NCBI GenBank assembly: GCA_000320545.1
Contig: ADNK01001386.1
Location: forward strand, 225,969-289,968
Direction: 5' to 3'
DNA: 64,000 nt
Origin: Bigelowiella natans CCMP2755
Taxonomy: Eukaryota > Protista > Cercozoa
A program made the position numbers and the translations under genes. This document shows, piece after piece, positions 30,208-63,748 of the stretch. The notes beneath the pieces are model-generated. The model saw only the letters and a list, made by a program, of their open reading frames with translations. It ran no database searches and was not told the origin of the DNA. The stretch's first letter is position 1, and each line of letters opens with the position of its first letter.

Positions 30208-32808
30208 TCACATTTTTGAGAAAACTGACTCAATGTTATGACTAGCTGCGTCGCCGATACAGATAACATCTGGAACGTCATAGCTCTTGGCCTTGTTAAT
30301 CTTCTCAAGAGACTTCTTGCCATGCGTTTTGTCTGTTCATAATAGTAATCTCATCTTCCTTATTATCTTTCACAAGTTTGTTAGATCATTTTGGGGAAAG
30401 GTTTTAATCGAACATCTGCAAGCGCAGTGAGAAACAGTATTACCAACGCACGGGAAGACAAAATGCTTAATGAAAATTATCGTCATTTTCTAAGTTAAAT
30501 GTTGACCGTGATTATCCCCCCCCCCCCCTGATTCTGTCTTCTCTTCTGCGGCCGCTCTTCCTGATTCTTTCTTCTTCGTCTCCGAATCATCCTTGTCGTC
30601 TTGGTCATTATTGCTACTGGCTAAGGAGGAAGGTGCGTTCTTCTTGCTCCTGAACGAGTGGTTAATTGATCTTATCACTTTTTTCATAACTTTTTTCCGC
30701 ATCTTCTTCAGGCCCTTTTTCGTTCCTCCAAATCCTAAATATTGGACGAATTTAAAAGTAATATAAAAGACGAGGATGGAGACAGAGAGGGGAAGAGTGC
30801 AGTTCCTTCCATTTCATCGCTAATATACTTCGGGTTCTTCGCGATCTAGAAGATTCCAGTGCCCTAGTGAAGTCGTCGGCGTCACCCAAGATACCTGTGT
30901 CAAATGATATTGTTGCTGAATGCAAAGCATCTTTTCCTCTCTGAGGCCAATATCTTCTCTCTATGATCATGCTTGGGGCAAAGTAATCTACATTTTGAAA
31001 AATATTGCGAAGAATATGTGTTAACTTACGTAAAGTTCCCTGAATTGCGGCCTTATGACTCCTTAAGACTTCGACACTCTCAGCCTTAATGTAAAACAAT
31101 AAAGCTGCTTTTGTGAAATTACTTGATAATTTAAAGAATTATGAAACCTCTAACACGATGACGACAAGTCTCATTGGTAGTAGATCCATCTAAAAGACAA
31201 AAAATCAATTAGATTCAACGGATTGCTTGATAATGTGCAGCAGGAAGGAGACGTTATAATTTGTGCGTGATACGAAGAAGAAAAAGGAAAAGAAGAAGAA
31301 GAAGAACAACGGTGTGCTTCTAATAATACCGAAGCCATAGTTTTCGGGAGGTATAGGCCCGGGAACGACTATGAGGGAAAGCAGCACACATATTGCAACA
31401 AGAGACACTGTCAGTCGGAAAGAGAGAGGAGAGGGGGAAAAAGACAGGAACAAACTCACTCATGTAGAAACACTTACCTCAGAGATTTCTCGAATAAATT
31501 TATTCAGCTGCTCCACTACGTACTTGACGTTTACTACAACCTAAATTTCGATTAGATAAATTGATATGAACACCATAACAGATGGGGACACTCAGTATGA
31601 TCTTCAATAAGAATATTCAGATGAATTTAACGCAGTTGGCGGACCTTTTTAGGCTTGTCAATCTTTGCCTTGGAGTGCGTTTGGATGAACATATCGAGGT
31701 ATTCACAAGCCTGACGGCATTGATGAACCAGCAAGACAATACAAAAACAGGAAGAGGATGGATGCAGCATCGACCAAAGAAGCGAGTAAATTCATGATGA
31801 AGAAGACCAAAGATCATGTAAAAGGTATTGCGGCTGCTCATCATCTTACTCACCAAAACGCGTAGAGTCTCGCGGATTAGCCGCGCAAAGCCCTAAGGAC
31901 GCCAGCCACATACAAGGAGGATTAGTAAACGCGTGTTTGCTTGCGGATCAGTTCTAGTTTGGACAATTACCACATGGCGCATCTTCTTTCCCCAATCGGA
32001 GAAGAAGTCCGTGAGCGTTGCAGTTATCGTCAACACCAAACCGTCCCTTTCGACAAGGAGGAGAAACCAATACCAAGAAGAAAGAAAGATTTTCGCAAGA
32101 GGTAGAAGAAAGAGAGAATCAAGAATGAGACTTTTGATAAATGGGTAGAAGCATGTATGTACTGAAAGATTTACATAAAATGATATTCTCTATTCTACCT
32201 GTCCTGAGACGTATCTTCATTCGTTATCTCACTCACACCCCCCTTTTTTTCTGTCGTCGTCGTCTTTAGCAGTAACTCGAGGGAGGGGAGCAGCGACGAT
32301 AAAATCACGCTGGTAAGGACCTGTTTAATTTGAGATGAAAGAGGACGAATTAGTCTACCCCCAAGGAAGGAAAACATACTTTAATCTTCTCCAACTATAT
32401 CTCCTACCGCAAGAGCTTGTGAAGCACCAGTGGAAAAGTTTCGAATGGACACCTCCGCCCGTCTCAACAAGTTCCGCTCTTCCGTTGTTACCCCTTTAAA
32501 GAACGAAGAATATTCGGTCAATTTCATCATTGCAAGAACTGTGTTCAGTCGCATTGCCTCCTCTATTCCCTCACCTCTTAGTAAGGGCATTAGGCGATGC
32601 CGAAGTAGCTGATCCGCAAAGGTTTCATGACGTCGCGCGTCGTTGATGACGGACACGAACAAATAGTCGGAAATTGAACCAAAACCCTCCACCTATCATC
32701 AAAATGTATGCAATTATATTGATATTATCTGCTGTTCATGTGTTGTTATATGTGTGTGTGTGAAATATAGTTTGACATTTTACATCGAGCGCACAATCAC
32801 ACGGTACT

Positions 32809-32852
<44 letters not shown>

Positions 32853-33039
32853 AAGCTCTCTTCCTTCCTCCTGCTGTTGGAGATGTTATTAGTGGAGAGA
32901 CTTCTGCATTGGATTTATAATAGATAACAATAATTCTACCAGGATGTTCTGTTGCTCATCCACGTGTGTCTTTGACAACCAATTATATTGACTCCATTGG
33001 AATAACTTTCAAACATAACCCGTAAATACGCGTTTGTCC

Positions 33040-33079
<40 letters not shown>

Positions 33080-33368
33080 ACATCATTGCATCTTTGCTTA
33101 ATTTTCGGCAAATAAAGAATTTTTAAACAAAGACGACAAACTCCAACCCAGCTGTTACTTGTTATGAAAGTAGTAGTTCAAAATATGTCCTCTACAAAAG
33201 CACATCAATCATGCAATTTTCGGTGGGTCTGCGCTAGTAATGTTTCTTACTAAAACAGATATCTGCTTTTTCTTCTCAGTTAGTAGTATGAAACATACCT
33301 CGATTGCATCGACAACAGCCTCCAGGAGTGGTAAAGATGACTTCCCTGCAGATATAATTGGATGATGG

Positions 33369-33408
<40 letters not shown>

Positions 33409-34932
33409 CTGTGTATATTTCCCACCTTCTAAGGAAGGCCGCGACAAAGGCTAGTCGTTGATCCATCAATGTGAGTTAAAACACAACATAGTAGGAAAAC
33501 ACTATTAAGATGAGAATCTTACAAAAGGAATAAAGAATAGGTATATATAAGATGGATATAGTGTAATTGTTCGCGAAGAAAGATGCAACATATTCAATAA
33601 TTCTCCAAACCTTGTCGCACATAGTGTTCAGGGCCCAAAATAAATCCTTTGAATATTAAGCAAGCAAGTAAGCAAGTAAGCAACTAGATTTGATGTTATA
33701 TAACTCAGACACCCGTTCCTGATTGTAGCCGAGGCAATACCTGGGGAATATGGCTGAAAATCTCTTTTGTTCTCGACTCTGTATCACTGCTATTGTTTAT
33801 GTTGCTGTTGCTCATTTTCTTGAAGTCCTTCCTGTGGGTGAGAGAATCATATCAGGGAAAATTAAGCCTCAACCTCTTTTCCCTCCATCTTATTTCTTTT
33901 AACACATAATTACGTAGCCTCCTCCCTCCCTCCCCCCCTTCTCCTTCACTATCTATCAACAATGATTTAAGCATTGGTAATGCCTCTTGATCAGCTCTAT
34001 TTTGGGGCCCAGTTCGGTGACTGCGTTGGTGAGGATTTATGCAAGCAGAAGAGGGATAGGAGAAAGAAGATAAGACAAGAAAGGGAGGAGAAGAGACAGA
34101 GACAGAGAAAGAGAAAGAGGGAGAGGGAAAGAGGGGGAGAGGCAGGGAGAGAGAAACATGTTTCAAACTTGACATAGTTTCGCTTGATGTATATCGGAAT
34201 AAACCGTAGGACATCTGTAAATACGCATATCTGGATTATGTACTGCTACTACTTTTTTCAACGAGCTCCAACAAACGTTTTTTGAACTGAGTGGACCAAC
34301 TGTCCAGCAATGAGTTTCGAATGCCTTGGAAGGTTATGACAATACTCCGTTACTAGGAGAATAACGCTAGCACTCGAGATCATGACTTCATACAAATATA
34401 TACTATTGACAAATGTAAACGCTCAGCAGCTTAATTTTCATGCAAAGAAGACCGTCAAAAAGCAAAACAATGGCAGGGTAAAAAGGCACACGTGCTTAAC
34501 CTTCCCATGACGCAACAAGAGAAAGTGTACTTTTCCTACATACAATTCATCAGCAATTTTTCAGTTGCGTTGATCGTATGTTCGAAAACGGAGAGAAATG
34601 TAGCGATGGAGAGTCAGAGATAGGATGTTTGGCAAGAAATCATTCAACAAACCTGGCATCAACATGATACCGTCCATGTGCTTTGTACAAGGCCTGTAGC
34701 TCGTTTGTGTACCTTATCATCATTGTCATCATCATTATCATTATCATCATAACAAATCAATGGCTGAGACCTTTTGCGTCGATAAACTACGTATTATTTA
34801 ATATGTATTACATGTGATACATGTGAGGAGTGAGAAATGACGAAGAAGGAAGAGAAGAAAATCAACGACTAACAACACCTGGTGCTCGCTACTGTACTTT
34901 TCCACACACAAACACACACACACAGAGAGAGA

Positions 34933-34978
<46 letters not shown>

Positions 34979-35012
34979 GGGTACACATTTACAGCTATGT
35001 TTGCCTAAATGT

Positions 35013-35045
<33 letters not shown>

Positions 35046-36517
35046 CAACATACCATCCAACCCATTTAAGCGCCTTAAGTAGGACAGCCATTGGTTGCTG
35101 ATGCAGTCCAATTACGGCATTGTTGCGACTCCCTAACCGTATTCTTCACATTCAGCTTATACACTAGAATATTACAAACTTCTTGTTACCCTCTCCTTCC
35201 TGTGAGCTTGGCAATTTTAAGCCAGAAGGGGGGGCGGAGGAGGAGGAACCTCCTGTGCTGTTTAGCGTACTTTCGCGAAGAATGTAGTGCACGAAGGCAT
35301 TGTACCTGACATAATAGAAGCACTATTTATATACCACGTGGTGACATATATTACACACACACACACACACACATAGAGGACATATTTATGGTTTCCTATC
35401 GAATAATCTCCAACCAACCACATGTGAGTGAATGAAAGCATGCGTGAGCCGCCAGATGTGTGCCTTGTTGTCGGAGCAGGTTATTGTCCAACTCTCTACC
35501 TTTCCGCGAAGAAGGAGAACACCTTATAGTCGGGAGGGAAACACGGCACCACTAGTTCGCATACGTGAAGGAGCGCATCTACGAGTTTTTGCAACACCTG
35601 CAGAGTACAACGGTTATATTCGCGTCATGTGTGCACACGCATGTATATGTTCAGGAAGTTGGTGCTAACCGCAAGAATGATTTCCAGACGTGCCCTTCCC
35701 TTAATCTTTGTCTTCTTCTTCGATTCCTCCTCCTCGCCGAGAAATGAGTCAAGATCCAATGTCCCTTGAAAAAAAAAGAAGAAGAAACAACAGTTTTGTT
35801 ATTGTTGTTATTATCTACTCTTCTATATGAACAATCAACTAATGTGGGCTGCTGCTGCTGCTGCTGCTGCTACTACTACTGCATACCACGTGAGGGAATA
35901 GCTCTTGATACTTTCTCCATGAGTTGATCCGCAACCTGGGCGCTCACTCGAACCTTCAGCACGAGAAGACATAAAGGAGCAACATAAAAGATGGTGTCAT
36001 AAAGAAGGCAGTTTTATTAGTGATTTCCTCAGAGATAAGTAGAGCTAAATCACTAGAAATAATGATAACCTACTAGTAGCTGCTAGCGCATGATTCCTAC
36101 TCTAAACAACCTTTGAAGAATCAATGTTGGTGTTGGGTCGCATAATCGCTCCTCCCTTGCCATGGTTGCGCAATCGGCTTGGCGAAGTTCCTGCAGCAGC
36201 ACCGACTAGCTTTTTCTCAGTGCCATCACTTACAGTCATCTCCAGATTCACCTAAGAGACGAAGATAGGTAACAATGGAGAGAGAGAGAGAGGAGATGGA
36301 TGAAAAGAAATTCTAAGTGATGCTGATGGTACGGCTTTGGTGATTTATGAACAGTAGATACTGTGTTGCTTTAGTTTGCAAATCTTTCTCTATGTGTGTG
36401 TAGTTTACCCAGGCTTTATGAACACTCTAACGCAACCATAGCACAAATTACTTATGTTTGTATTTCAATGTACATATCAAATGATTTATTCATGTTTACA
36501 TGTGAGTGTGCGCGCAT

Positions 36518-36559
<42 letters not shown>

Positions 36560-37362
36560 AAATATCTCCATGTAAACTGACCATAAGCTCCGCCTGGATA
36601 ACTTCAAAAGCCTGAAATAATAAATGTTACCATCATGCACGCAAAGTATTCTGCTGCTCAGGCTGCATAGTATTTCATTGGGTGGCGACGTGCATGCTAC
36701 TATGCACCTATTGGATTGTATTATACCTCGGAAAACTGATAGAAAACCAAGAGTTCAAGCCTTTCGTACACCTGGCAATCATGACGATGAATAGGAGGAG
36801 GGAAAGATGCTGCTGTTGAGGATGAAGAGGAGAAGCACAAAATTACTCGCAGTTCATAGAATCCAATGCACGAGTCTTATGACGAATTATTCTCATCAAA
36901 CTATGCGTCTCTTTCTCTAATTGTCACACACACACACACACACAGTCACAGAGAGAAATTGAGAACCTGAGCTCTTAGGGTGTCAGGTTTCGGGGATGAG
37001 GTAGCTTCCTCCTCCAGCTGCTGATAATCCTTTTGCTCCTTCTCTTCCCTTGAAGCATTCGTATCGTTTTTAAACTTCAGATTGAAGTTAACCACGGAGA
37101 ATCCTGTTTATGCACAATTGTGTTTTTGATGATACATGTAGCAGCAGCAGCAGCAGCATCATGAACCTCTTGTGGTAAATGTGGAGACAAGAATCTTTAA
37201 GAAACGCTTGGTAATAAAAGGTGCATGTGATAGAATACCTGATGCTTCTGCTCCTACTACCCTCTTTGTTTGGCCAATGGTCCCAACTTCTGTCTTCTTC
37301 TCCTGGTGGACAGTTGTGAGAGAAGGAAGGAATGCGAGTTTGTATTATCGTGCAACATTCAC

Positions 37363-37408
<46 letters not shown>

Positions 37409-37672
37409 CAACACACACACACTCAACAAATTAATTGAAACGACTACTATATTTTGACATCGCTCTCTCGCTGTAATTCATACCCTTCTTTCACCGTCAC
37501 TTAGACTAAGAAAGCGTGCACTATGTGCGAGACGGTCCTCACGATCGACACAACCCAATGTTCCTTTGCCACGAAGAAGAAATACAGAGAACACCACGAA
37601 GAATCATCATCTTGAAGCACAATATACAACGATGTTACAAAGACACTTCGTTCGGCTATTTGCAAGTTGAGT

Positions 37673-37704
<32 letters not shown>

Positions 37705-39148
37705 CAATGAGCTCGGGGGGATCCGCCTCCGCAATCTATTATAAATCAAAGGAGTTCAGTCATGACAGTTAATGTTCTACTTTTGCAACAACCAGTCAGT
37801 GAATGGCGTTTGGACTACTATTCAATGATGTGAAGAATAATAATGACTTTCTCACCTGCACGCAAATGAGAACGTTGTTTAAGATCAACCGATGGATCAC
37901 TCTGGAAGGTTCCGAAGACACGGTAGTAAGGGGGGATGTGGGAAGAAAGAGGTAATGAATAAAGAGAAATGCATGGTAAGAGCTGTTCAGTCATTTCATC
38001 GCGTCCTCGCTATTCAGGCCACTTTGTACTTGTACAATTGGTTTTGAGGGAGAAGAAACGAAATCTCATTAGACTCCACCTTGACATTGCTTTGATTTGA
38101 AATTGGATGATGTGCTCGGCGAACTTTAGTACGCTGGCACTCATTCCTCTTTTCACACCCGTGTGCTTTGGTGAAAGCATATGTTATTGTTTAGAATACG
38201 ATTGAGATTCAGCGGCTGTGTATCCATTGCCGAGACAATGTGGGAATAAAAACAACCACCTTATTGCTCTTGATCGATATGAGGTTGAACATGCGCAGAA
38301 ACTCTTTCACCTACTCACATAGCAATTTGGAATTATCATTATTATCATTTTGATTATCTTAAACCTTAACATTCATATCCTATCATGTTATCATCGCATT
38401 CTGCAAGCATTCAAGACCCTTTCCACAAATAGCGTCGCCCTTTCAAGGTTGTTGTATCCTAATTAGCCGTATCAAAGTAGTAGTAGTGGTAGTAGTAGTA
38501 GCAGTATTAGTACAGGGGTATTTCATACCATAGCACATTGATTGTGTAATACTAAGTTCAGTCTTTTAAATACACCCCAACTCTCATAACATTTCTTTCT
38601 AAAAAATATGTAACCTATCTCCACGCGAATGCTCCCTTCAAAATCATGAAACCTACAAGGGAGAAGAGGCAAATAGGAGTTATTGAACCAAAAACCATCA
38701 CCATGTAGCTGATGATGAAGTAGTGTGCTACTCAAGAAGCAACTAGAAGTTGTTATATTTCCTCCCTGTTGGTTTCAACATCTTATGAAAAGAGAAAGAG
38801 CGTAAAAGAGATTAGTCTGTCCTTTGTGGGGAAGTTTCTTACTTGGAAGGAAGCCCTTCTTTGCAACGGCTTCTTGCAAGATTTATTAACTGCAAATCGC
38901 ACGGAATTCATCGGTAAATATACCATTAGAACGAAAAACCACAACACTTATTTACGTGCAAAAACACCTTTTCGGCAGGATTTTCCTGCTCCTGCTGCAA
39001 ATCTTCAAGTGTGACGGCTTCTATCATTAGATCGAGGTATTCCTCTCCCAGCAACATCTGGTCAAATATAAGCAAAAGCACGGCAAGGTGGAGGAGAAAC
39101 AAGTTGGAATAACGAAAGTTTACCGCGACAGAGTGAATACATACATAT

Positions 39149-39184
<36 letters not shown>

Positions 39185-39600
39185 ATTTGTACGTCACCGC
39201 TGCCAGCTCATCCTTTCGGTCTTCAGTTGAGGTTGAAACGCCTCCTCCTCCTCCTCCTCCTTCTCCTTTTTTCTCCACACTGTTGCGTCTGTTCTCAGCC
39301 TTGCATAAGGAGAAGAGATCATTATATCTTTTATATACTATATTTACATTTATGGTTTTTATAGATGACATACCTGTACTCCTGCGACCCCTAAGGCAAG
39401 GAGAACTCCTTCTAAATGCCTATTGTTATGATTACTATTGTTACTATAATCGTTATTATTATTTTATTAAGGATTAGCATGGAAAGTACACAGTAGCAGG
39501 ACGGTTAACGTGCCGACTGTTTGTAACAAGAAGGCATATTGAGGTCATTGTGACATAAATTTTACTCTACTGCGTCGTATACACAATCATATTTTTGTAC

Positions 39601-39643
<43 letters not shown>

Positions 39644-41364
39644 AATATTATTGTATATGATATGCATGCTACCGTGGAAGGGCCAGCATGTACGCGATGA
39701 GGAGCTCTGTTAAGGTTACCTAACAAAAGGAGGATTATGCTATATAATTCTAGGTTGCTGATTTAACCAAGGACGGTACTGCAAACATCTTCAGCCATAG
39801 AAATTATTGACATTCACCTTTAATTTGTTTTCCCCCTTCTGCTCTTGTTTATCTTCTTCGTTAGTATTGGTTCTGTTTTTGGATATTCCTCTGTCGTCGT
39901 CATGAAGCTCTTCTGGCATCTTCTTAATCTTGGTATCTTCTTTCACCTCCACAAACCCCCAGTCCTTGGACTAACAGAAGAAATAAGGTTATCCAGAAAA
40001 TGGAGAGAAAAAGAGAATTTAACAAAACAGTGGTAAACTCACAACGATGGCACTACGATCATACTTCGAACTAAAAACATGCAATTTATCACCCCACTCC
40101 ACAGATAAATCGTTCTCAGCGCCGTCAGATTCTCCGTAGCTCCTTCAGTCACAAAATACGCACGCATAAGAGGGATTATGGCCCAAGTTAAAATTCTAGG
40201 TTGTCAGTAGCAAAAAATGTGAGGCATGAACATGCCAAGAGCCGCTTCAGAAATTGGATCTTCGGCGTATGCTTTGCGTTACAATATATGGTATCCGTTG
40301 TGTGTTATTCAGAGATTTTTCTGTTACTATTCTGTGCATAGAAAGCGTCATCATATAACCCTTACTGAATCTTGTTTCAATCAGCACCAGGTTACAATTT
40401 TAATTATTATTACCACCGCCTAATCCTGTCATCGCCGCAGTGTCCTTCCATGCAAACCACATGTAGTATACTCAATGAGGATTATGTGCTATCTTACGAG
40501 AACATCACCAGGGTGATAATGGGTACATTTCATGATGCGGCATCAGATCAATATGAAAAAGAAATTGTGGTAGAAAATACTATGCACCTCTTGCTTTCCC
40601 CTGTTCCGAACAGAAAACTTGCTACTGCTGCTATTATCATTATTTTCCATCATGGCAAGGCGACTGAGAGACGACCAACGACAAGACACGCCTAATTCAT
40701 TCAGATAATAATACGCAAAACAATAACCCAAATTACGAATTCATTTATTTGTTGTTCGAGGAACTGTTAGTAAAGAATCGTGGTTTGCAAGGGGATATGC
40801 CAACATCCAGTTAAAGGAGTATGGCTTGATTTACTTACTTCCTAGTGCTCTGAGAAGGTTGGTGGTGTGACTATAGAACTTATCTAAAGCAGGACAAAGC
40901 GATGTTGGTGATGAATTAGATGGAGAGGAAGCAGCATGGCTGTCTCCAATCACAATTCTCCGTGTGATACTAAGAATATTAGCAAGTTTCTGCGGAGAAA
41001 GGCCGAATTCACTTTGTCTCTTTATGCGAATAGCCTACATCAGAATGTTTCCAAGCCATTAATTTAATCTTAGGAAGTTGTTGAGTATGATCGCATGTTG
41101 CTATTTCAGTGTGTAATAGATATATTATGAGTTTCATGGGGCGGACGCCTATCAGCCGGGGAGAGTGTATTTCTTACGAGTGGAACAAATAAGATAGTCT
41201 TTAATATCTTTATCCGTGCACGAAAGTATATTAAAACCTGTGTGAGCTTGGCTTCCATCAACAGACCTGAAGTGTAAAGACGAGGAAAATTCGTATATAC
41301 GTTCGATAGTAGCGCCATATGACCTATATGCTCACACTTATACGTGACCTTTGTTTGTGTGTAT

Positions 41365-41405
<41 letters not shown>

Positions 41406-42279
41406 TGCGTAAAAATGTTATGGTTTGAAATATTCTTAATCGTAATTCATCAATTTGTCTTCTTCTTCATCTTTATCATCATCATCGCTTCGTTCTGCCT
41501 CCTCATTCTCACTACAACTACCTATCTCAGGATTCCCATCAAATCTGAATAAATGGCCGTTGTCATACATAGCCCCCGAGCAATAAACAAACAGGACAGT
41601 AGAAAACGAAAATTAGCAACGGCAAAGAAGGCAGTGGACTCGAACTTGAGTAATTTTGTGTGTGAAAAGCAGCACGACAAGAGTGGTTTTTCTGTACACA
41701 CACGCACACACACGCGCACACACACGCGCGCACGCGCATAAGACTACATCTAATAGAAAATTCATAATGATGATGTCGATGAGGAGCATCCAACCCAATT
41801 TGAAGGAGGGGTGGGCAGCGGGCAAGGAGATCTTGAAGCAATCGTGCTGATGAGTCGCTGAGGGTACACCTTCCTAGATCAAGATCCGTAAGAGCTGACT
41901 GTGAGAAAAATGACGAAACCTCTTTGCCCTCAACCATCTCTTCATCGGTATCTCCTCTTTCCTCCATTTTCATGTCCACGTCAATCATCTTAGATTGTAT
42001 GCCCTGCTCGTCTTCTCCTTCCTTCTCCTTCATTTTCTCCTCATAGTTATCATTGCAGTCTTTGTTGCGACTTCTTTTGCTACTACTATTATTGCTAATT
42101 TCGCTGCCATGGACCGCCGGCACTCCTAATGCAAAGTGGATGCGCGGATAATGGAGAGAAGAAATACTCGTCATAAATACTCGTCCTTTGTCATCACTGT
42201 TTATCATCATCCATCCGTCAGTCCCTCTAATGCCCTACCCCCTCTTCTCTCTCTCTCCCTCTCTCTCTTAAACACACAT

Positions 42280-42315
<36 letters not shown>

Positions 42316-43022
42316 CATATTCGTATACTAGAGGTGGTTTTACCGAGTTTACCTCCTGCCGCAGTGGTGTTATCGTTTGATGCAGAGGAAACAGCACCAA
42401 CCATCTGCGTCGTTGTTCCTTCGATTTCTTCTTCTCCTTCTTCTTCTTCTTCTTCGTCTTCTTCTGCCTTGACAACTGCCATAAACGGATTGCGGCTGCT
42501 GCGAATACTGGCAATTAACTCTTGAGCGCCTTTTTTTCAAGGAGAGAACAAACAATGTTAACAAGATATAATCAAAGGTATTATCTGATGTTAGTTGGAC
42601 AGCTTCCAAATACATGCTATCCTACTTGGTTGCAAGAACGGTTCGGTTTATTGCACATCACAGTGCTGAGCATTATTTCCCTATCGTACTTTCCTCTTTC
42701 TCCTCCCCTTCCTCTCATAATTAGGAGCATACAAACCAGTGTCAGTGATGAGGGGATTGGAGCGGAGAGATATTCTCGTAAGGGTCGTGTTGACTTCGAG
42801 AGCCCTATAGAGCAGAAATTATCGTGTTAGTATGATTTTCACTATGTAAGACCTGTGAGAAGCGGATAGGTTAGTGGTGGTGATGACGATGACGATGACG
42901 ATTATGATAATGATAATGATAATGATGGTGATTGAAAAAGCTAAAAAGGGATCTATGTTGAACCATATTTACACCTTTCGAGAAGAATGAAGAAAAATTA
43001 ATTTGGGAAGAGTATCATTATA

Positions 43023-43096
<74 letters not shown>

Positions 43097-43514
43097 TAAA
43101 GTGCAAGAATGTGACCGTCCAATTTCGCTTGCAGCGAAGTCATTGAAACAGTTGTGAGAAAGATCCACAACCTTAATAGATAATGAATACACGTATCACA
43201 TAACACGAAAAATCCTAAGTTTTATGTTATGGTTTTCGTTATTTACTATCTCCGATTAAGGTAATTGCACTGAATCAAGACTGCAAAAACATGCATGGAG
43301 AGCATGAAGAGATAGCATGAAATTCAGGACTTTAAGGGAAGGATGAAGTTCTATAATTTGGGCGATCCAAAGGGCTGCGTCTTCTCCAAGCATGTTGCGA
43401 GACAGATTCAGCTTCAAAATACAGATAATAATCAAATTAAAATTCAGAATGGAATGTGACCTTTCCATCTCTCTCACACAGGATTTACATCCATGACGCC
43501 CACACACATACAAC

Positions 43515-43552
<38 letters not shown>

Positions 43553-43783
43553 TCCACGTCGTATATCTTGTAATAACACATGAAGCCAATATAGAAACCA
43601 CCTCTTGTAATACATTTGCCCTTGTGAGAAGTGCAAGAGAGCTGGAAAAGCTCTGAGAGAGTCGCAAGAGATTTCCGGACAGACTTAAACACTCGATACA
43701 GCCCAAGCGAGTCTCCAACTGAACCTCAAGCTCTCTAACGATCTCTTCCGACTTGCGCTTGTCCTCACGATACTAAAGCAGCA

Positions 43784-43858
<75 letters not shown>

Positions 43859-44526: not shown

Positions 44527-44590
<64 letters not shown>

Positions 44591-44984: not shown

Positions 44985-45030
<46 letters not shown>

Positions 45031-45554: not shown

Positions 45555-45586
<32 letters not shown>

Positions 45587-48598: not shown

Positions 48599-48638
<40 letters not shown>

Positions 48639-50163: not shown

Positions 50164-50206
<43 letters not shown>

Positions 50207-53200: not shown

Positions 53201-53418
53201 GGCATGCGTGCTAACGCCATACGGAATCCGCGAGCATACGTATCTCCTACTTCTGTGGAGGACTTCGTCCCCACCTCCTGATTTTCCCCAATTTCTTCTT
53301 CTTCTTCTCCTTCATGATCCAGATCTTTGGAATTCTTTCCGTCCTGCCCACGGTATCTATTCTTAGAATGATTGCATGACAAAGCGAGTGTATGGTAGTT
53401 TGGTATGTTGTTGTGTAT

Positions 53419-53456
<38 letters not shown>

Positions 53457-56400
53457 TTAGAGTGCGTGTCTGTGGTTAGTGACTTACGTCATCGAGAGTA
53501 AAACTAAGAGTTCTTCGAACCTAGCACATCCAAGCAACATAAAGTACAGTCAATACTTTTATCAACAGATAGATAAAGGAATTTTAGTCAAAATAATGAT
53601 TCCAATACTCAACTATTCCCATCAGCGTAAATTATACGATATTCGCTCTATTTTCATAAATAGTTGGTGTCCACCGTTCATATATTCTTCTTTCACCTAT
53701 AATACCGTCATCACCTCTCTCTTTTTCTTCTTTGCAGATGCAATCAGTCCCACAAGTCTTCTATGCGCTAGTAGCTGCTTGCGGATTGCGTTTACAGCTA
53801 AAAGGTCTCCATCAGTATCGATCTCATCGCCATCTAAGGCTTTTCTCCGAGAGAATAAAGTTGTAACGGCTGTCACAGCATGAATAGTTATTGCCCGCAT
53901 GGTAGTGGATACGACCTGTATCATCATCATCATCATCATCTTCATCATCATCCGTGTATTCAATGTTAATCGACAGTGTTGTTGAATATGATGGGTAAGG
54001 AACGATATATCTGCAGTAGGTGAATAGTAAGGGCTCGAAAAACTAGGTAGGAGGAGGGGAGGAGGGGACGAGGGGATGGTGAAAGTCGTAAATTCCAACC
54101 AACCGGGATACATCGATGCAGCGCCGACGAAATCTGTGTCCCGAGCAAGGTTGGAGCCTACAACCAACAATAGTACACACACACACACACACATACACAT
54201 AGAGAGAGAGAGGGGGGGAGGGGGGGAGGGGAGCAAGTGTAAAGACATAAACACCTCTAAAATCTCGAGGAATACTAAGGACAGAGAAAACGATTATCAA
54301 ATCACAAGCAGTCTCTTCTGTTAGAGCTTCATTCAGAACCTACTGTCATCATACATGGCTTTGGTGACAAAAACGTCTCTCAATTACTAAATCTGTAATA
54401 TTATAATATACTAATTTATTCATGAATATTTATTGAGAAGCAACCCCTTCTTCAAGGAGGGAGGATCGAAGTTCTTTTAGAACCCCAAGCAGCTTTTCCT
54501 CACGTGACATGGCTTTTACCAACTTTTCAAAGACCAAATGTAAGTTAAAGATAGTACATGTGTATGTGGAGAATATTTGTTAATGGACATGTGCGTGTGC
54601 ACGTTTTATTTTGAACAAACTTAAAAAGCAGTGAGTCCGATAATGCGGAATATGAGAGAAATATCGAAGGTAATTATAATTATTAACCGCAGGATTGTTG
54701 ATGTCGCTCTCCATCATATCTGGGTCATATGTTTTGCTAACGTCTTCACGGTTTACTGCATCATCCCACGGTTCCCCTAACATGACACACACACACACAC
54801 ACACGAGAGAATATCGAATAAAGATTAACACATAGGTGATCATCGTCTTCTTGGTCTCTCCCTTCTCTTTGGAACATCATACGCCGTTACTATACTTACG
54901 AGGTAGAGCTGTTATCGGCGAGGATGACCGCCCATCCGTCATCTAACAATGATTGCAAGAAGTGGTCGTTTCAATGACTCTATGCAGATATTATTGATGG
55001 AATTTTACAGGAAGAATTAATTTCTTCATCCCCCTCCCCCTCGTATTATTTTCACCGATGAGCCTTCTCCGCTAGAGCTTACGATTCTTCGCATGGAACT
55101 GAAAGGAAAACATTTAATTGAGGTTCTGACTGACTACCAACAATAGAAAGGTCCGAAAAAAGGAGAGAGGACACAGATAATCGTTTGGAAATAAACTGAA
55201 ACGGTAATTTATATATCATAATCATCAATGCACGTAAGGACTAAATTTTTGATATTCATCGACGTGAAATAACTACTAAATATAGTACTTTGAGAGAAGA
55301 GGAGATTTATGAAGATAGAAGAAAAAGAAGGCTGAAATAGAAACACCAGCATAAATGGCGACTACGTATCGTTATGACCTCGAGCCAGCAATTGATTGTT
55401 GTCGCAAAAAGCGCAATGGCGGAGGCATGTGGGCTGGTTTCTGTTTACGGGTGTCCAACGCCTCTTTCACACTTGCTTTTATTACATTTTTGTCGCCTCT
55501 TTGTATCAATGCTGATGTTGATTTCGCATCTCTCTTCTTATCATCAGTTCGCTGGTGGTGGTGGTGTGGAAGATGGTGCTTCAGCATCATCGGACCAAAC
55601 GCAGCGGATTTTGTTGCTGTTGTTGTGCTCTTGGACGCAGCGCCGAAGTAGTCTGCCATGTAGGGAACAGATAACCGATTGTGGAAGAAAGATAGAACAA
55701 CTGGTATTGGGATGATGTGACGTACAACGCAACGGAGAGCAACAAAGAATTGAGGAAAAATTGGGAGCTTCATACCAAGAAATTAAGATTTACAAATACG
55801 GTGTATACCTCATCCGCGAAGTGTAGCACTATGTGTAGTAAAATAGTAGTAGTATAACAGCATATCATCCAAACACGTTGCTTACCATCTTTCATCCATC
55901 CATATAAATGGCGGGAGAGGACACAGCCTTCGAGCCAGGCGATTACACGGGTGAGGGCCTGTGAATAGAGAGATTGTTTCTCAATGATTCAACATGTGTA
56001 TGGTTAGAAGGTGTTGACATATTATGATTATGTTTTCCTGAGACATGCGTAGACAAACAACAAAGTAGTACCATGCATTTGGACTTCAAATTCTTAATGC
56101 AACGGATATCTCTGTTCCTTCCTAAGAATTATTGATGCAAAAGCATTTGTGATCAGAATAACCGATATGTTTGCTATAGAAACGGATAAAATAGCTATCT
56201 CTTCCACTTTCTTCTCCCCATCCCTCCCTCTCCCTCTCTCTCTATGCATATATGTGTGTGGTGTATTTACGTTTCCGTTTCCTTCTTTCTCTATACTTTC
56301 GACGACAGGATGATTTCTTATCTTTTCTAACATTCCAAATCCTCTCTCATCTGACAGATTCTCCTCCCCCATATCACTCGTTTATAATATTGTTTTACCT

Positions 56401-58614
56401 TCCTTTGGATTAAAATAGGTTGGCTTCCTCCCCATATCGTGGAACTCGTTCAGTACCCAGTTCTTCGAAGAACAAACACCAGTCGTTAAGCAATCACGCC
56501 AAATAATAGTTCTTCAAATATACAAATAATAATAAACTTCGGGATATATCTCATTCGAATGCATGCTCATTTGGGAAAACCTGCCAGTGGTGTACAATTT
56601 GCCCTAATTAAAAACGGAAGATTCAAACACACAGCGATGTAAAATTGAGAAACACGGGGAGAAATCCAACACGAATATTTCTAGAAATATGATAACACAG
56701 AGAATAATCTAACAGAATTCCTAGCAAAATAGCGCAAAGATAAATCGATTTAGAGGATGATAACTGTTGTGTAATTTTCCTACCTACGGGGTCCAAATTC
56801 AAACTCCACAGCTGCACGATAAGACAGGGACAAAAGGATGAGGAGGAGGAAGGATAAGCAAATAAGAAATTAAGGGGTGGTAGGCTGTGATGAAGATTAG
56901 AATGATGGGGTGTATTGTCCCGCTCCTAATATTCAAGAAGTCAGCCGCAAAAAGTCCATTGGTTTTGAAGTAAGCAGTCTAAGTTCTGCAGCTGGCTACT
57001 TTACTTACCAGTTCCTCCTCCTCGTCATCATCCTTGCGGTGGTCTCCATTCCCCACTGAATTAATAGAGGTAGCAGAGAACCGTCTGCTGCTAAAACTGC
57101 TGCCGCTGTTGCGATTATCTCGGTGCAGAACACTGCCTTTACTATCTTCATCCTGGAGATTATTGATAACGTCTCCTGTACCCTGACCTTCAGCGCTCTC
57201 CCATCGGGGTGCTTCTACATTGGATAAGCGTGTTTTAGGTATACTCAAAACATGGATGAGAGCAACGATTGTGATTTGGAAGGCATGTGTATTCTAGGAA
57301 TAAGTTGCTAGTATAAACACCGTTGTTGTCACTTGTAGTGCCGAGCCCTATTTCAAGAATCAGCAGCTCACGACGATCATGCTGGAAACGGGTCAGACTC
57401 CTACGTTTTATATTTCATTTTTATTTCGCAGTTGTCGCCATAATTCATTGAAGATTTCTTCAAACCGTAGAATTCTCTTGCACAATGCTGTTATGGCTCG
57501 AGACTTATTGTTGTGGACCTACCATCACAAGGGAAAGGACGAGGAGGAGGAGGAGGAGGAGGAGGAGGAGGAGGATGCAGATAATCGATAGCTCAGAATG
57601 TTGTTGTCAAACAAAGAATTACCCACTCTTTCTCTTGCAACCCTGTTTCTACTACTACTCCTCCTCTCCTCAAATCTTTGAAATTTTATATTTCTCACTG
57701 CCCTAACTACGTGCTCTTTTGTTGACCACCGAGTGCATATCGAGCTTCTGTGAGTCATTATCTCTTGTTTCGAGCTTACATGCCCATGCAAGTGCTGCAT
57801 CGGGTCCTTGCCAGCCCTGAAAGGAGGAGGGGGGAGGAGGGGGGGGGGAATGGACATCCAGAGTACATATGCTTCGTTACATGATGATGATGATGATGAT
57901 GATGCTGATGATGATGATGGAGACCATTACTATAGCAATAGTGATACTACATATTCAACTAAACATATCGTCCTCAATGATATAGATTTCTATGTATATT
58001 ACTCAATCCACCTACCTGCTCGCTCTCGCGGTCAATATTTCCAACTCCTATATCGCCACCATCTCCGCTTTGTTCCTTTTTTATTCTTACCCAATCATCT
58101 TCTCTATTATAAGGTTTTATCATTCTATTATCATCGTGGTCCAAGGAAGAAAGCAGCTGAAGAAAGACCCCTTTAATCCTACTTGCCATCTCTGGTTGTA
58201 TACCGTTGTTGCGACTTATCAGGTCGCCGATTCCCCCCTCCCCCATTGCCGTAGCACGAGGATGAGATGACATGTTAGCGCCATTCTGTTCGATAGAGAA
58301 GATAGAGAAAAGACAAGAGGCAATAACGGGTATTAGTAGTGAGAAATTTTAAATAGCGAGCTCTAATGTTGTTGATAATGGTACTATTTGTGCTGGGATC
58401 TATCGTTGCATGCAGCAATATCAATCTCGTGGTCGCAGTAGCTCCACTAACCTTCTCCTTCTCGATGGCATCAAGATGTTGCTTCTCCATCTATGTATAT
58501 ATGCATATAAGTGCTATGTGTCTATGTGTGTGTGTATAAATTTGGGTTCCAAATTGCTGGAGTAATTTAATGATAAAATTAATTTACAGCATCTTCTTCC
58601 ATAGCAGTACGTCA

Positions 58615-58656
<42 letters not shown>

Positions 58657-59108
58657 TTGTGTGTGTGTGTGTGTCATTCGCCCCCCCCCCTCCCCCCCCC
58701 CATCCGCTTCTTTCTCTTCCTGCACTTCCTCCTCATGTTCTTACCTGATCATCGTCCTCATCGTTGATTGACCCACCCATCTGAATAGATTTCATCACGA
58801 TAACGTCAATCAATAGTAGTACAACAATATATGAGGATGTGTTAATCAATAGCGAAGAATCATCTAGCAAAATAATAACCTGCATCTTTCTTTCTGTGAG
58901 AAGGCTTTCCAGTTGTCCTAGCAGATGCACATGCGGTGCCTAGTTTTAGGTATATCGAGTGTCAAGAAGAAGCTTTTGCCGTGTGTGTGTGTGTGTGTGG
59001 GTGTGTGGGTGTATGTGTTGTATGAATATCAGTTTTTATATGCGGGGAAAAAGGGATTATCAGAAACTATCACACGTTGAATATACTTCACACGACGCAT
59101 AATATAAC

Positions 59109-59450: not shown

Positions 59451-61269
59451 AAGATAAGATTATGTGGTTCTATTGGAATTATTCAATAAGAGAATCAGAG
59501 AAGAAAAGTAAAAGGAGGAAGATGGTGAAGGAAGATTGTCGTTGGTACTCATCTGTGAGTGGCCGTCATTGCCTCCACGTGGGAAGAACACCATGTTTGA
59601 GAATCCTCATCTTTCGGTGAGAGGATTCTCCGCTCTCTCTCTCTATCTCTCTCTCTCACTCCCTCCCCCCCCCCCTCCCCTCTTCCCACACACACGCACA
59701 CACAGTCTCTCCCTTTTCTTCCCACTAATCTTGGTGTTGTGTCGTTGTCTTCTTTCCTTGCTAGTTGTGACCTATACTTCACTACTAGGATGATGATGAT
59801 GATGATGATTCCTTGGATCACAACTTCCTGGTCATCATTCCTCGTTACTACTTACCCGCAGTTATTGAGGTGAAGGCTTTCAAGCCTCGTGACGAACCTA
59901 AACGTTCTAGTGTGCAGCTTTATGTTTCGTTGCCGCTTACGGTTTCGAGATCGCTTCAAAGCCTGTGGAATTGTTTGGTGATGATGATAATGATGATGTT
60001 GAGGTTGGTGATAATGATAAAATGATAACTAGGACGATGATGACAGTGATTTCGCAAAAAAGGCAAGGAGAATAGGGTGGTCCTAGGTTTATAGCAACGT
60101 TCATCTAGTTTCGGGTAGAAAGAAGTAGTAGTAGCACAAATAACCCACGATATGGAAAAACCAAAAGGGGGGGAAGGGAAGTGAGTCATTAGACCTGGTA
60201 TAGCACTGAAACCCCTGCATCACCAATGCCAGGATTGAACGACAAATCGAGTGTTTTGACCCCTTGGTTGTACATTTGCATACATATTACCATCAGATCC
60301 AAAGGCATCATTATAGGCGAGCAGCAGCAGCAGCAGGGGGCAATGAAGTGTTGGAATCATTAATCCACACAACATTATTTCACTTAGCTTACCTCCGACT
60401 GGCCTCCCACCAATCTCACGAGCATTCTTTAAAAGCCTTTTGCGCGATATTGTATGGGAAAATAACTTAGAATATGCACCGAACACTTACACGAGCACTC
60501 ATACAGAGAAAGAAAGAAAGAAAGAGAAAAATGGAACATTCTCACTACCTTCCCTTTTTCTAGAACGTAAACATAGTGTATCAAACGAAGGAATGTGTGC
60601 CCCATCAAAGCAGTCAGTACAACAACAATAACAACTAGTGCTAACTACGTACCACCTATTACCTCTTGATGCCCTTATCTGTGATGTTATTGTCTGATAT
60701 GTCTACAAATGTCAGCGACCGGCAGCTCCCTATAAGTGTTCCCTTTCGCATGCCAAAACAAAATGATAGTTTGTATTAACCAGCTGAGAAGCACTCACAC
60801 AACAAATAAGCATTATGGAAATGCATAAAGACCACATATCCAGCTCCAACATCTCCAATTTTATTCTTTCGAATTCCAACGCGTTTCACAGTTCCGAATT
60901 CTGACCCGTTTCGACCCTAACATAGAGTAGCAAAACCAACAATCGATGAATATTTGGGAGAAGAATGTGCATGTGCGTATACTTGTGTGATTGGTATCCT
61001 TCATGCAAGACTATTTTGTGTGAGAGTTTGTCGTTTGTCCCTACTTCTACTTCTACGACTACTACTTTTACTACTACCTCTACTACTACCACTTTTATCT
61101 TCTACTACTTACCCCTCCAGGACCCTGAGCGAGAGCTTCGCACAAGGCTCTAACTGCCTCTGCGCCAGCTTCGGCAAACTAAACAACAACAAGAAGAAGA
61201 AGAAGGAGAGGAAGTAATTCCAACAGTAGAATGGTGTCACATAGTATTAGATGGACAGCAGGGAAAATA

Positions 61270-63102: not shown

Positions 63103-63146
<44 letters not shown>

Positions 63147-63598
63147 TAGTTTCTTGATTGATTGATTGATTGATTATCACTACCCTAGGTGCAATGGATG
63201 TTCTTTGTGTTAGTGTTGGCTCTCCATCCGAGCCTGGGGCTAGGTCCTGCACATTCACAAATTCATGATGAGAATGGTTATCTTGTTGATACAGATTATA
63301 TATCATATGCTTAGGCTGGTGACATGGGTGTCGGCAACCTTAAGTATTATCTCCATTGACCCAATTTGCTTCGCCTGTGGTGTATAACGATGACAACGAT
63401 ACTAATGACGATGGCGATAATCATCATGACGATACTTACGTTTACGAAATCATTCATAAGGTATTATTACCATAGAAGTGGCCCCCTCACTTGCTGTGCA
63501 TAGAGCTGAAGCCTGACCAAGTACACAGCAACCAATCTCATTCAAACTTGATAAAAAGAGTGCACGTACACACAAACTCACATACGTGCAAAGAGAGC

Positions 63599-63638
<40 letters not shown>

Positions 63639-63748
63639 AGCAAAGGAGGGATAGAGATGAATGACGAACAAAAGGTAGCCGTAACCCCAAGAATAATCCA
63701 AGGAAAAATCTTACCGCGGCCTGAGCATCTATATAGTTCTTCAGCCTG
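30208..63748 (-). CDS. Giant multi-exon gene model: TPR-like / LRR / PDZ / TPR / LRR / C2-like / Sec6; 5' end not in the window, 3' end ambiguous
   Basis: Unbroken chain of minus-strand GT-AG exons with no promoter-like spacer. Phases match at every junction tested (55378/55099, 51.3-50.1 kb, 38615/38458). Not all junctions were tested, so two or three tandem genes remain possible. Confidence 0.55.
30752..38458 (-). CDS. EXOC3: Exocyst Sec6/EXOC3-like domain (C-terminal part of the giant gene)
   Basis: Sec6-like motifs in family order: HIIQFQIKAMSR-GRDEM; VYERLELL; LVDALLHVCELVVPCFPPDYKVFSFFAER; VLLKALKWVGW; DLFWALNTMCDKV; DYLFVSVINDARRHETFADQL; DGLVLTITATLTDFFSDW; GFARLIRETLRVLV. Compared from memory with plant and animal SEC6. 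Confidence 0.85.
41790..45900 (-). CDS. Ribonuclease-inhibitor-like leucine-rich repeat block (LRR block 2)
   Basis: Exons LVSLAVDGCMLGDE; LDLAKNGLTYIGA; LSRLVLNNNRLGMQGA; RTLIDLALEYNFDI; IECLSLSGNLL; LKLNLSRNMLGEDAA; VDLSHNCFNDFAA; LTRISLRSNPLITD; LTDLDLGRCTLSDSSA all fit LxxLxLxxN/CxL. Confidence 0.85.
43786..43856. repeat. (GT)n/(AC)n microsatellite
   Basis: About 70-nt GT run with one interruption, in an intron of the giant gene. Confidence 0.95.
46268..47190 (-). CDS. TPR-like helical segment
   Basis: QRIDVYMKSGKQKEALSL and LAKMLVKRAKKMQLK|GDFDAAVRMLKMAYLHDCNNALY resemble TPR helix pairs. Confidence 0.5.
50085..50695 (-). CDS. PDZ domain split over three exons
   Basis: Spliced with matching phase-1 junctions: RKVIEFSSEEPLGFQLDGRIITDVRPESQAKRQ|GVTSGWQIELVNEK|DVTDESTFDMLAESLKDAR. 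This includes the (P)LGF loop and the PESQA..G...G..I..VN pattern. Confidence 0.75.
59820..61450 (-). CDS. RNI-like leucine-rich repeat block (LRR block 1)
   Basis: HVRVLEIQ; AEAVRALCEALAQ; VKRVGIRKNKIGDVGA; CRSLTFVDISDNNITDKGIK; RLESLHLNNCG. Confidence 0.75.
62345..62445 (-). CDS. Possible TPR-like exon upstream of LRR block 1
   Basis: CEENGLRLMRRNHPHSALLYFNHAV resembles one TPR unit; only a single repeat was seen. Confidence 0.35.

What the first reader, a model, noticed from the sequence alone, without database searches (positions are those of the whole stretch)
30208..63748. Apparent giant exocyst Sec6 fusion protein: TPR-LRR / PDZ / TPR-LRR / C2-like / Sec6
Seen: about 33.5 kb of continuous minus-strand exons. 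The Sec6-like region starts at a splice acceptor (38458) rather than an ATG. The best candidate gene break (in-frame TAA at 55372 plus an AT-rich gap) is bridged by a phase-matched intron, AG|GTCATA at 55378 to TTTCAG|T at 55099. Established: Sec6/EXOC3 is normally a stand-alone CATCHR subunit of roughly 750 aa with no LRR, PDZ or TPR domains. Inference: a multi-thousand-residue exocyst subunit carrying its own receptor-like and scaffold modules, which could couple sensing or cytoskeletal/membrane binding directly to vesicle tethering. I know of no described protein with this architecture.
Basis: partly seen in the sequence, partly recalled or inferred. Interest (0 to 1): 0.78.

Follow-up and report, generated by a model that had tools for sequence, protein, structure and literature searches.

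The report
Giant PH-PDZ-LRR protein ending in Sec6
The alga Bigelowiella natans has one very large gene, split into about 108 small exons, that joins a lipid-binding PH domain, a PDZ-like domain and leucine-rich repeats to a divergent copy of the vesicle-tethering protein Sec6; a second alga has the same gene, but nobody has described it.

Summary
The core of the finding holds. The window is the end of a Bigelowiella natans contig. A public ab initio model (JGI Bigna1 74747, 3418 aa, about 108 exons) runs on the minus strand from 58786 to the stop at 30208.

- **RNA support.** Spliced transcript contigs from three studies cross 37001-42124 through 21 GT-AG introns. One reading frame stays fully open.
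- **Ortholog.** A 2639-aa protein of Amorphochlora amoebiformis is collinear with residues 509-3418.
- **Supported domains.** Sec6 family: Pfam 32.3 bits here and 59.4 in the ortholog, hhalign 92% against the alga's own Sec6. RNI-type LRR: E 3e-24. A probable PDZ.
- **Not supported.** TPR and C2.
- **Not tested.** The extension from 58.8 to 63.7 kb, because the contig ends at 64000. The 55.1-55.4 kb junction has no RNA evidence and rests on conserved upstream exons in the ortholog.

A canonical Sec6 gene lies on another contig, so this is an extra Sec6-family paralogue and probably not the exocyst subunit itself. It is a new variant of a known kind, present in databases but not described in the papers I searched.

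The parts
30208..58786 (-). Span of the public gene model P0001 (JGI Bigna1 74747, 3418 aa, about 108 exons; stop TGA at 30208-30210)
   Evidence: Found with one exon as query. Source label. Exact mapping of 3415 of 3418 residues to 108 minus-strand blocks. Stop codon.
37001..42124 (-). RNA-verified stretch: 22 exons (23-330 nt) joined by 21 GT-AG introns. They total 1788 nt, with one frame fully open.
   Evidence: Transcript contigs of X1, X2 and X4 from three studies. Splice sites corrected to GT-AG. Frame 1 has 0 stops in 595 codons against 38-45 stops in the other frames.
30955..38856 (-). Sec6-family (CATCHR-type) region, P0001 residues about 2500-3260. The best Pfam stretch lies at 35121-35708.
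   Evidence: PF06046 scores 32.3 bits (cut-off 29.7) in P0001 and 59.4 bits in ortholog P0002. hhalign against B. natans canonical Sec6: probability 92%, 233 columns. BLASTP E 8e-5. Atlas feature search gives three Sec6 clusters at 0.94-0.96. Sec6p 2fji is the top Foldseek row for a low-confidence model.
41795..45695 (-). Ribonuclease-inhibitor-type leucine-rich repeats, residues about 1780-2215
   Evidence: LRR_6 38.2 bits. Profile search of solved structures hits NLRP and ribonuclease inhibitor at E 3e-24 to 1e-22. The last repeat, in RNA-supported exon 41795-42124, aligns to P0002's best LRR_6 stretch at 42% over 36 aa.
49924..50685 (-). Probable divergent PDZ domain, residues about 1085-1170
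   Evidence: A two-sequence profile hits almost only PDZ chains; the best is Scribble PDZ at E 0.004. Atlas feature search puts PDZ clusters on top at 0.93 and 0.91, recognition 3005. Pfam is silent and the AF2 model is low-confidence here.
51540..52467 (-). PH domain, residues about 830-940
   Evidence: AF2 gives seven strands plus a C-terminal helix at pLDDT 72-93. Foldseek top hit is the pleckstrin C-terminal PH domain: E 8e-6, TM 0.85, rmsd 2.6 A. Weak Pfam PH hits fall at equivalent places in both orthologs.
45657..48600 (-). Conserved region of unknown fold between the PDZ-like domain and the LRR, residues about 1420-1790.
   Evidence: 29% identical to P0002. No Pfam family and no solved-structure relative.
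55381..58786 (-). Probably the same gene, but no RNA evidence.
   Evidence: No Pfam family. Four collinear same-strand matches to residues 155-334 lie upstream of the annotated start of the Amorphochlora ortholog; the best is 15 of 21 identical, E 1.7e-6.
55101..55378 (-). Intron that bridges the in-frame TAA (55372-55374); 278 nt, 67% A+T
   Evidence: Sequence. Used by P0001. No reads were laid on it.
59855..61178 (-). LRR-like open frames upstream of the model. Whether they belong to this gene is unknown.
   Evidence: LRR_6 21.4 bits at 60192-60356, below the cut-off. The other pieces are silent. No similarity to P0001 or P0002.

Best explanation
Window 30.2-58.8 kb (minus strand) of this Bigelowiella natans contig holds one very large, extremely fragmented gene. 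Its product is a protein of about 3400 residues (at least about 2900). In order it carries a conserved N-terminal region of unknown fold, a PH domain, a probable PDZ domain, a conserved helical region, a ribonuclease-inhibitor-type LRR domain, and a C-terminal region of about 760 residues that is a divergent member of the Sec6 (CATCHR tethering-factor) family. The gene is single-copy, expressed and spliced, and conserved with the same domain order in the chlorarachniophyte Amorphochlora amoebiformis. Shown: the gene structure over 37-42 kb, the domain identities, and the conservation. Inferred: because a canonical Sec6 exists elsewhere in the genome, this protein is an accessory Sec6-family paralogue. 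The likely mechanism is a membrane-associated tether or scaffold. The PH domain would hold it on a phosphoinositide-bearing membrane; a basic (K/R)xxRxR stretch early in the domain is kept in both species. The PDZ-like and LRR modules would bind partner proteins. The Sec6-like rod would engage exocyst subunits or SNAREs, as yeast Sec6 does.
For: - **Organism and model.** P0001 is labelled jgi/Bigna1/74747. The genome is 91.4 Mb in 3736 contigs, matching the B. natans assembly figures in PMC12730881.
- **RNA.** Contigs of 6806, 3818 and 4302 nt from three studies cross 37001-42124 with GT-AG introns. The exon chain equals the contig length (1788 nt) and is open in one frame only.
- **RNA against the model.** Where RNA and the model differ (exons 41795-42124, 41522-41544, 41238-41266), the RNA version fits the ortholog better.
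- **Ortholog.** P0002 matches at E 7.7e-78 and is collinear over P0001 509-3251 by BLASTP, and to the end in a pairwise alignment, at about 30% identity. It comes from an annotation trained on RNA-seq.
- **Domains.**
- **Copy number.** No paralogue of the Sec6-like or N-terminal parts elsewhere in the genome.
- **Canonical Sec6 elsewhere.**
Against: - Only 5.1 of 28.6 kb is RNA-verified. All three contigs stop 103 nt above 42124, inside a poly-Glu (GAA/GAG) stretch (my mapping of those 103 nt), so the link to 42.4-58.8 kb rests on the ab initio model and on the ortholog.
- P0001 is wrong in at least five exons.
- The Sec6 score in B. natans is only 2.6 bits above the cut-off and covers a small part of the Pfam model.
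- The AF2 model of that region is poor (mean pLDDT 39.9), and sequence searches of solved structures found no Sec6.
- The word search among proteins of 375-1190 aa found no ordinary Sec6 relative.
- No functional datum exists. The mechanism is inference from domain content.
Confidence: 0.72

Rival explanations
1. The model is a chimera at its 5' end. Residues 1-445 (55.4-58.8 kb) are a separate upstream gene that ends at the TAA at 55372, and the PH-PDZ-LRR-Sec6 gene starts near 54.5-55.1 kb. The LRR/PDZ/PH-Sec6 fusion itself would still stand.
For: The ortholog's annotated start aligns to residue 509. The open frame 55375-55782 ends in an in-frame TAA followed by a 67% A+T stretch. The two bridging exons are only 15 codons each, and residues 339-508 have no detected counterpart in the ortholog locus. 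BLASTP found no alignment for a possible conserved extension before the ortholog's start codon.
Against: Four matches to residues 155-334 lie upstream of the ortholog on the same strand and in the same order. No separate gene is called there. The frame just before the ortholog's start codon is open back to a TTTCAG acceptor and resembles the B. natans sequence by eye, about 5 of 13 identical. That points to a truncated annotation.
Confidence: 0.3
2. The gene is longer than the public model. As the reader proposed, it continues through LRR-like exons at 59.8-61.2 kb up to and beyond 63.7 kb, possibly across the contig end.
For: There are LRR-like frames on the same strand (LRR_6 21.4 bits). The first residues of P0001 do not read as one contiguous frame in the genome: MKSIQMGG in the DNA against MQMGG in the model, so its start is weakly founded. 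The contig ends at 64000.
Against: Nine of ten further frames from 59.8-62.9 kb have no family hit. None resembles P0001 or P0002. Coding signal there is weak and rich in microsatellites. The ortholog locus I could fetch stops at the counterpart of residue 155, so nothing speaks for a link.
Confidence: 0.3
3. The C-terminal region is a generic helical tethering-factor (CATCHR) domain of another family, such as Vps53, Sec10 or COG, or merely Sec6-like by chance. It would not be a true Sec6-family member.
For: The Pfam score is marginal in B. natans. The atlas list also holds Vps53, Sec10, COG and RINT1 clusters at 0.90-0.93. The Foldseek match to Sec6p has E 8e-3 and rmsd 14 A on a poor model.
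Against: The ortholog scores 59.4 bits for Sec6, with no other tethering family listed. hhalign gives 92% against the organism's own Sec6. 28 of the 100 atlas hits are Sec6, including the top three. Sec6p is the single best of 350,542 chains.
Confidence: 0.1

Closest known systems
Sec6 / EXOC3, exocyst subunit (Pfam PF06046; yeast Sec6p C-terminal domain, PDB 2fji)
   Same: The C-terminal region of about 760 residues is homologous to Sec6. It is predicted all-helical with long helices.
   Different: Ordinary Sec6 is a stand-alone protein of about 750-950 aa; B. natans has its own on contig C1073. Here the domain ends a protein of about 3400 aa that also carries PH, PDZ-like and LRR modules, and it is only about 19-30% identical to the canonical copy.
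Hypothetical protein AAMO2058_000273100 of Amorphochlora amoebiformis (P0002, 2639 aa)
   Same: Ortholog. It is collinear over P0001 509-3418, with the same weak PH hit, the same LRR_6 repeats and the same Sec6 domain. It is also extremely intron-rich; its gene spans 62 kb.
   Different: It lacks the first 508 residues as annotated, although matching exons lie upstream. Its acidic linkers are shorter. It is unnamed and undescribed.
Sec3 and Exo84, the exocyst subunits with a PH domain
   Same: A PH domain and a CATCHR rod sit in one polypeptide, the arrangement by which the exocyst reaches phosphoinositide membranes (PMC6784791).
   Different: They belong to different CATCHR families, have no LRR or PDZ, and are of ordinary size. 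In the survey cited, Sec6 has no extra domain.
Vertebrate Sec6-family paralogues (EXOC3L proteins, TNFAIP2/M-Sec); from my own knowledge, not tested here
   Same: They are extra Sec6-family members beside the canonical subunit. Sec6 expansions in several lineages are noted in PMC6784791.
   Different: Those are Sec6-domain-only proteins and arose independently of this one.
Second non-canonical Sec6 gene of B. natans on contig C330 (locus L002)
   Same: A Sec6-family domain is fused to membrane-binding modules in the same genome.
   Different: It reads Sec6 C-terminal half, then C2 (59.5 bits), then PH (29.7 bits), in one 756-aa open frame without introns. It has no detectable similarity to the giant protein.

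Membership tests
Sec6 family (Pfam PF06046) | Whole-protein score above Pfam's curated cut-off (29.7 bits) | tested here: met
   P0001 scores 32.3 bits, E 5.4e-8. Ortholog P0002 scores 59.4 bits, E 3.2e-16. Single exons do not reach it: 16.7 bits, none.
Sec6 family (Pfam PF06046) | Homology extending over most of the domain, not one motif | tested here: inconclusive
   Pfam stretches cover model positions 105-153 in P0001 and 90-218 in P0002, of 537. hhalign aligns 233 columns to residues 344-576 of the canonical B. natans Sec6, probability 92%. The rest is conserved between the orthologs but not demonstrably Sec6.
Sec6 family (Pfam PF06046) | CATCHR fold: rod of stacked helical bundles | tested here: inconclusive
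   The AF2 model is all-helical but has mean pLDDT 39.9. Foldseek's best row is Sec6p 2fji at E 8e-3; Sec8 and the myosin V cargo domain also appear.
Exocyst complex subunit (functional Sec6) | Assembles with Sec3, Sec5 and Sec8 into the octamer | not testable with these tools
   No interaction data. A canonical Sec6 (86.3 bits over Pfam positions 1-500) is encoded on contig C1073, so this protein is not needed to complete the complex.
PH domain | Seven-stranded sandwich capped by a C-terminal helix | tested here: met
   AF2 pLDDT 72-93 over residues 830-940. 219 PDB matches at E <= 0.001; the 50 listed rows are PH or PH-like (Ran-binding) domains, and the best has TM 0.85. Pfam PH is below the cut-off in both orthologs at 14.6 and 15.6 bits.
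PDZ domain | Sequence or fold match to PDZ | tested here: inconclusive
   Profile hits are to PDZ chains, best E 0.004. Atlas features put PDZ clusters on top at 0.93. There is no Pfam hit, and AF2 pLDDT is about 30-44.
Ribonuclease-inhibitor-type LRR (Pfam LRR_6) | Repeated LRR_6 units above the cut-off, with kinship to RNI/NLR LRR domains | tested here: met
   LRR_6 scores 38.2 bits against a 23.4 cut-off. The profile hits NLRP and ribonuclease inhibitor chains at E 3e-24 to 1e-22.
TPR repeats | Any TPR family or TPR-structure match | tested here: not met
   None in the Pfam scans of P0001 (E up to 1) or P0002 (E up to 0.1). None in the PDB profile search of residues 1420-1800.
C2 domain | Any C2 family or structure match between the LRR and Sec6 parts | tested here: not met
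   None. Part of this stretch is mis-modelled in P0001, so a small domain could be hidden.

The most novel reading that the evidence does not exclude
Chlorarachniophytes evolved a self-contained giant tether. One polypeptide would bind a specific membrane lipid (PH), recognise cargo or receptor proteins (PDZ-like, LRR) and carry its own Sec6-type tethering rod. It would serve a lineage-specific trafficking route, for example vesicle delivery to the outermost membrane of the four-membrane plastid, or polarised secretion in the amoeboid or flagellate cell. It would act independently of, or as an alternative entry into, the canonical exocyst. Within the reach of my searches the family has only the two chlorarachniophyte members.
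Probability: 0.12. Interest if true: 0.8.

Novelty: new variant of a known kind. Interest (0 to 1): 0.5.

Why it matters
Exocyst subunits are among the most uniform proteins of eukaryotic trafficking. In the survey I read, only Sec3 and Exo84 carry an extra domain.

Here a Sec6-family rod is fused to lipid-binding and protein-binding modules, and the fusion is conserved between two genera that share only about 30% identity. That conservation says the combination is under selection. It points to a tethering route peculiar to an algal group whose plastid-directed vesicle traffic is poorly understood.

B. natans carries three Sec6-family genes, and two of them have PH domains. Chlorarachniophytes may therefore be a good place to study how tethers diversify.

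There is also a practical lesson. The gene has about 108 exons, some only 23-31 nt long, and RNA shows the ab initio model is wrong at five exons within the one 5-kb stretch checked. Domain scans done exon by exon miss the Sec6 domain altogether.

Tried and rejected
- **Exon-level Pfam scans.** 40 minus-strand frames gave almost nothing: no Sec6, PDZ or PH. Exons are too short, so silence at exon level is not evidence.
- **tblastn of the two other B. natans Sec6 genes against the window.** Nothing.
- **Word search with exon frame 32384-32692.** Nothing in the 57-180 aa range.
- **Word search with the Sec6-like part alone.** Nothing among proteins of 375-1190 aa.
- **phmmer and profile searches of solved structures with the Sec6-like part.** No Sec6.
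- **AF2 on the Sec6-like part with a two-sequence alignment.** Unusable confidence.
- **The look-up of encoding contigs for P0001.** Not on record.
- **Homology upstream of the ortholog's start codon.** BLASTP could not support it. I keep it only as an impression by eye.
- **Spurious joint 37158->42881 and loose ends at 37138-37160 and 42881-42927**. I read these as unrelated transcripts attracted by triplet repeats and rejected them as splicing.
- **Mostly non-coding DNA.** I considered this early, because the frames are short and microsatellites are many. RNA and orthology rejected it.
- **Earlier notes of this scan.** Nothing on this place or topic.
- **Joined model.** I sent no self-joined spliced model to any search tool. 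The only joined step was a script that counted stops in the RNA-supported exon chain. Whole-protein work used the public model by its id.
Full report
**What the sequence is.**
The window is G000:C2351:225969-289968, and the contig is 289,968 bases long, so window position 64000 is the contig end. The genome has 91.4 Mb in 3736 contigs. That matches the Bigelowiella natans assembly figures quoted in PMC12730881. The protein I recovered from the window carries the source label jgi/Bigna1/74747. The organism is therefore the chlorarachniophyte alga B. natans.

**First look.**
Between 30 and 64 kb no open frame exceeds 223 codons, and dinucleotide microsatellites are frequent. I trained a codon-usage score on long open frames from 180 kb of the same genome. 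It showed weak but consistent coding signal on the minus strand, and only low-complexity noise on the plus strand.

A six-frame scan of the whole genome with Pfam Sec6 found two clear Sec6 genes on other contigs. Inside the window it found only a 16.7-bit match at 35505-35693. Forty exon-sized frames scanned one by one gave no Sec6, PDZ or PH, and only sub-threshold LRR_6. At this stage the Sec6 reading looked weak.

**RNA evidence.**
Ten runs of this organism each hold about a quarter of the sampled words of 37-43 kb, the share expected for exons only. I laid four runs on 37001-43000.
- One contig per run crosses 37001-42124: 6806 nt in X1, 3818 nt in X2 and 4302 nt in X4, from three studies.
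- Every skipped segment is CT..AC on the plus strand. After allowing the stated shifts, that is GT..AG on the minus strand.
- Using the record coordinates I placed the junctions that were not listed.
- One apparent odd join, 41536 to 41787, resolves into a canonical intron 41545-41794. The two "other letters" reported for that piece are read as over-extension of the alignment.
- The result is 22 exons of 23 to 330 nt. They sum to exactly the 1788 nt that the contig has there.
- One frame has no stop in 595 codons. The other two have 38 and 45 stops.

That script is the only place where I joined exons. Nothing joined was printed or sent to a search tool.

All three contigs end 103 nt above 42124. 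By my mapping, those 103 nt lie in the next exon upstream, at the edge of a run of Glu codons. I read the common end as an assembly break at a repeat, not as a transcription start. Depth continues in the bins up to 42.8 kb.

The X1 contig has 4915 nt below 37001. That is more than the roughly 2.2 kb of coding sequence left, so it probably runs through the 3' end into the convergent neighbour. This is inference.

**The public model.**
The word search with the best-looking exon frame (32384-32692) found nothing in its length range. I then used the one exhaustive search. Its single hit is P0001, 3418 aa, 97% identical over the exon part.
- P0001 maps exactly to 108 minus-strand blocks from 58783 to 30211. 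Mean exon is 95 nt and mean intron 171 nt. The genome averages are 8.8 exons of 159 nt per gene.
- Compared with RNA it is wrong in at least five places. It lacks exons 40093-40142 and 40414-40444. It over-extends the exon at 41238-41266. It ends the LRR exon at 41869 instead of 41795.

**Ortholog.**
Searching among proteins of similar length with the C-terminal region gave one relative. This is P0002, a 2639-aa hypothetical protein of Amorphochlora amoebiformis, at E 7.7e-78.
- The two proteins are collinear from P0001 509 to the end, at about 30% identity.
- The Amorphochlora annotation was trained on RNA-seq with Trinity and PASA. Its gene spans 62 kb.
- Where B. natans RNA and P0001 disagree, the RNA version matches P0002. 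The stretch CTLSDSSARLLQDLLARCPPLLQI, which P0001 omits, aligns to P0002's best LRR_6 unit at 42% over 36 aa. The short RNA exon restores a KLTQ|AIRIKR join that mirrors KLRQAIRHNR in P0002.

Two pipelines in two genera, plus RNA, agree that LRR and Sec6-like parts sit in one protein.

**Domains.**
- **Sec6.** On the whole model, Pfam gives Sec6 at 32.3 bits against a 29.7 cut-off. P0002 gives 59.4 bits. A profile of the two C-termini aligns to the organism's canonical Sec6 with hhalign probability 92% over 233 columns. Plain BLASTP gives E 8e-5. The language-model atlas puts three Sec6 clusters on top at 0.94-0.96, followed by other tethering families. The AF2 model is poor (pLDDT 39.9) but all-helical, and Sec6p 2fji is its best Foldseek row. 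I accept Sec6-family membership. The full fold is not shown.
- **LRR.** The repeats are of the ribonuclease-inhibitor type, E 3e-24.
- **PH.** Residues 830-940 fold confidently as a PH domain, with TM 0.85 to the pleckstrin PH domain.
- **PDZ.** Residues 1085-1170 are probably a divergent PDZ. Two weak but concordant lines support this.
- **TPR and C2.** Nothing supports either.

**The 5' end.**
However, the 10 kb upstream of P0002 contains four collinear, same-strand matches to P0001 155-334. The best is VIAWLEGCVLSRH(L/I)YG, E 1.7e-6. No gene is called there.

I therefore think the ortholog is truncated in its annotation and residues 1-508 belong to the gene, at about 0.7. This is not shown by RNA.

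The stretch 58.8-63.7 kb could not be tested. P0001's own first residues do not read as one contiguous frame in the DNA, so the true start is open.

**Context and novelty.**
B. natans has a canonical Sec6 (L001, 86.3 bits) and a third gene reading Sec6 C-terminal half, then C2, then PH (L002). The giant gene has no paralogue.

A survey of tethering complexes that included B. natans does not list protein 74747 in its held supplements. [quoted passage not shown] I found no paper describing a Sec6-LRR protein. The architecture is thus present in databases but undescribed.

**Verdict.**
The finding is a real, conserved, expressed gene. Its extent is confirmed to 58.8 kb at most, and by RNA only for 37-42 kb. 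Its role as a membrane tether or scaffold is inference from domain content.

Noticed in passing
L002:931-3198 (G000:C330, near the contig start): A 756-codon open frame without introns encodes the C-terminal half of a Sec6 domain (49.3 bits), then a C2 domain (59.5 bits), then a PH domain (29.7 bits). It is a second unusual Sec6-family fusion in the same genome. Its N-terminal half may lie off the contig.
   Followed up: partly
L001:760-3624 (G000:C1073): The canonical Sec6 of B. natans (86.3 bits over Pfam positions 1-500) sits in one 955-codon open frame with no intron. This contrasts with about 108 exons for the giant paralogue.
   Followed up: partly
window 37705-37735, 40414-40444, 41238-41266, 41522-41544: RNA-supported micro-exons of 31, 31, 29 and 23 nt. 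The ab initio model misses or misplaces three of them.
   Followed up: yes
window 37138-37160 and 42881-42927: Short triplet repeats attract pieces of many unrelated transcript contigs. This produces a false 5.7-kb 'joint' (37158->42881) and many loose ends in the read table.
   Followed up: partly
window about 42336-42440: All three transcript contigs end at the same place, the edge of a poly-Glu (GAA/GAG) run. This looks like an assembly break at a repeat, not a transcript end.
   Followed up: partly
L024:1-82287 (A. amoebiformis BAAHQB010000019.1:324694-406980): The orthologous gene spans 62 kb at 24.6% G+C. Its upstream DNA and first intron (the first 11 kb I read) are largely (TA)n microsatellite, with exons standing out as small islands of normal composition.
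   Followed up: partly
window 21795-23966 (-) and 26000-28400 (+): A 724-codon single open frame lies on the minus strand, and a plus-strand gene converges on the 3' end of the giant gene. The 6806-nt X1 contig is long enough to run into this neighbourhood. Neither gene was characterised.
   Followed up: no
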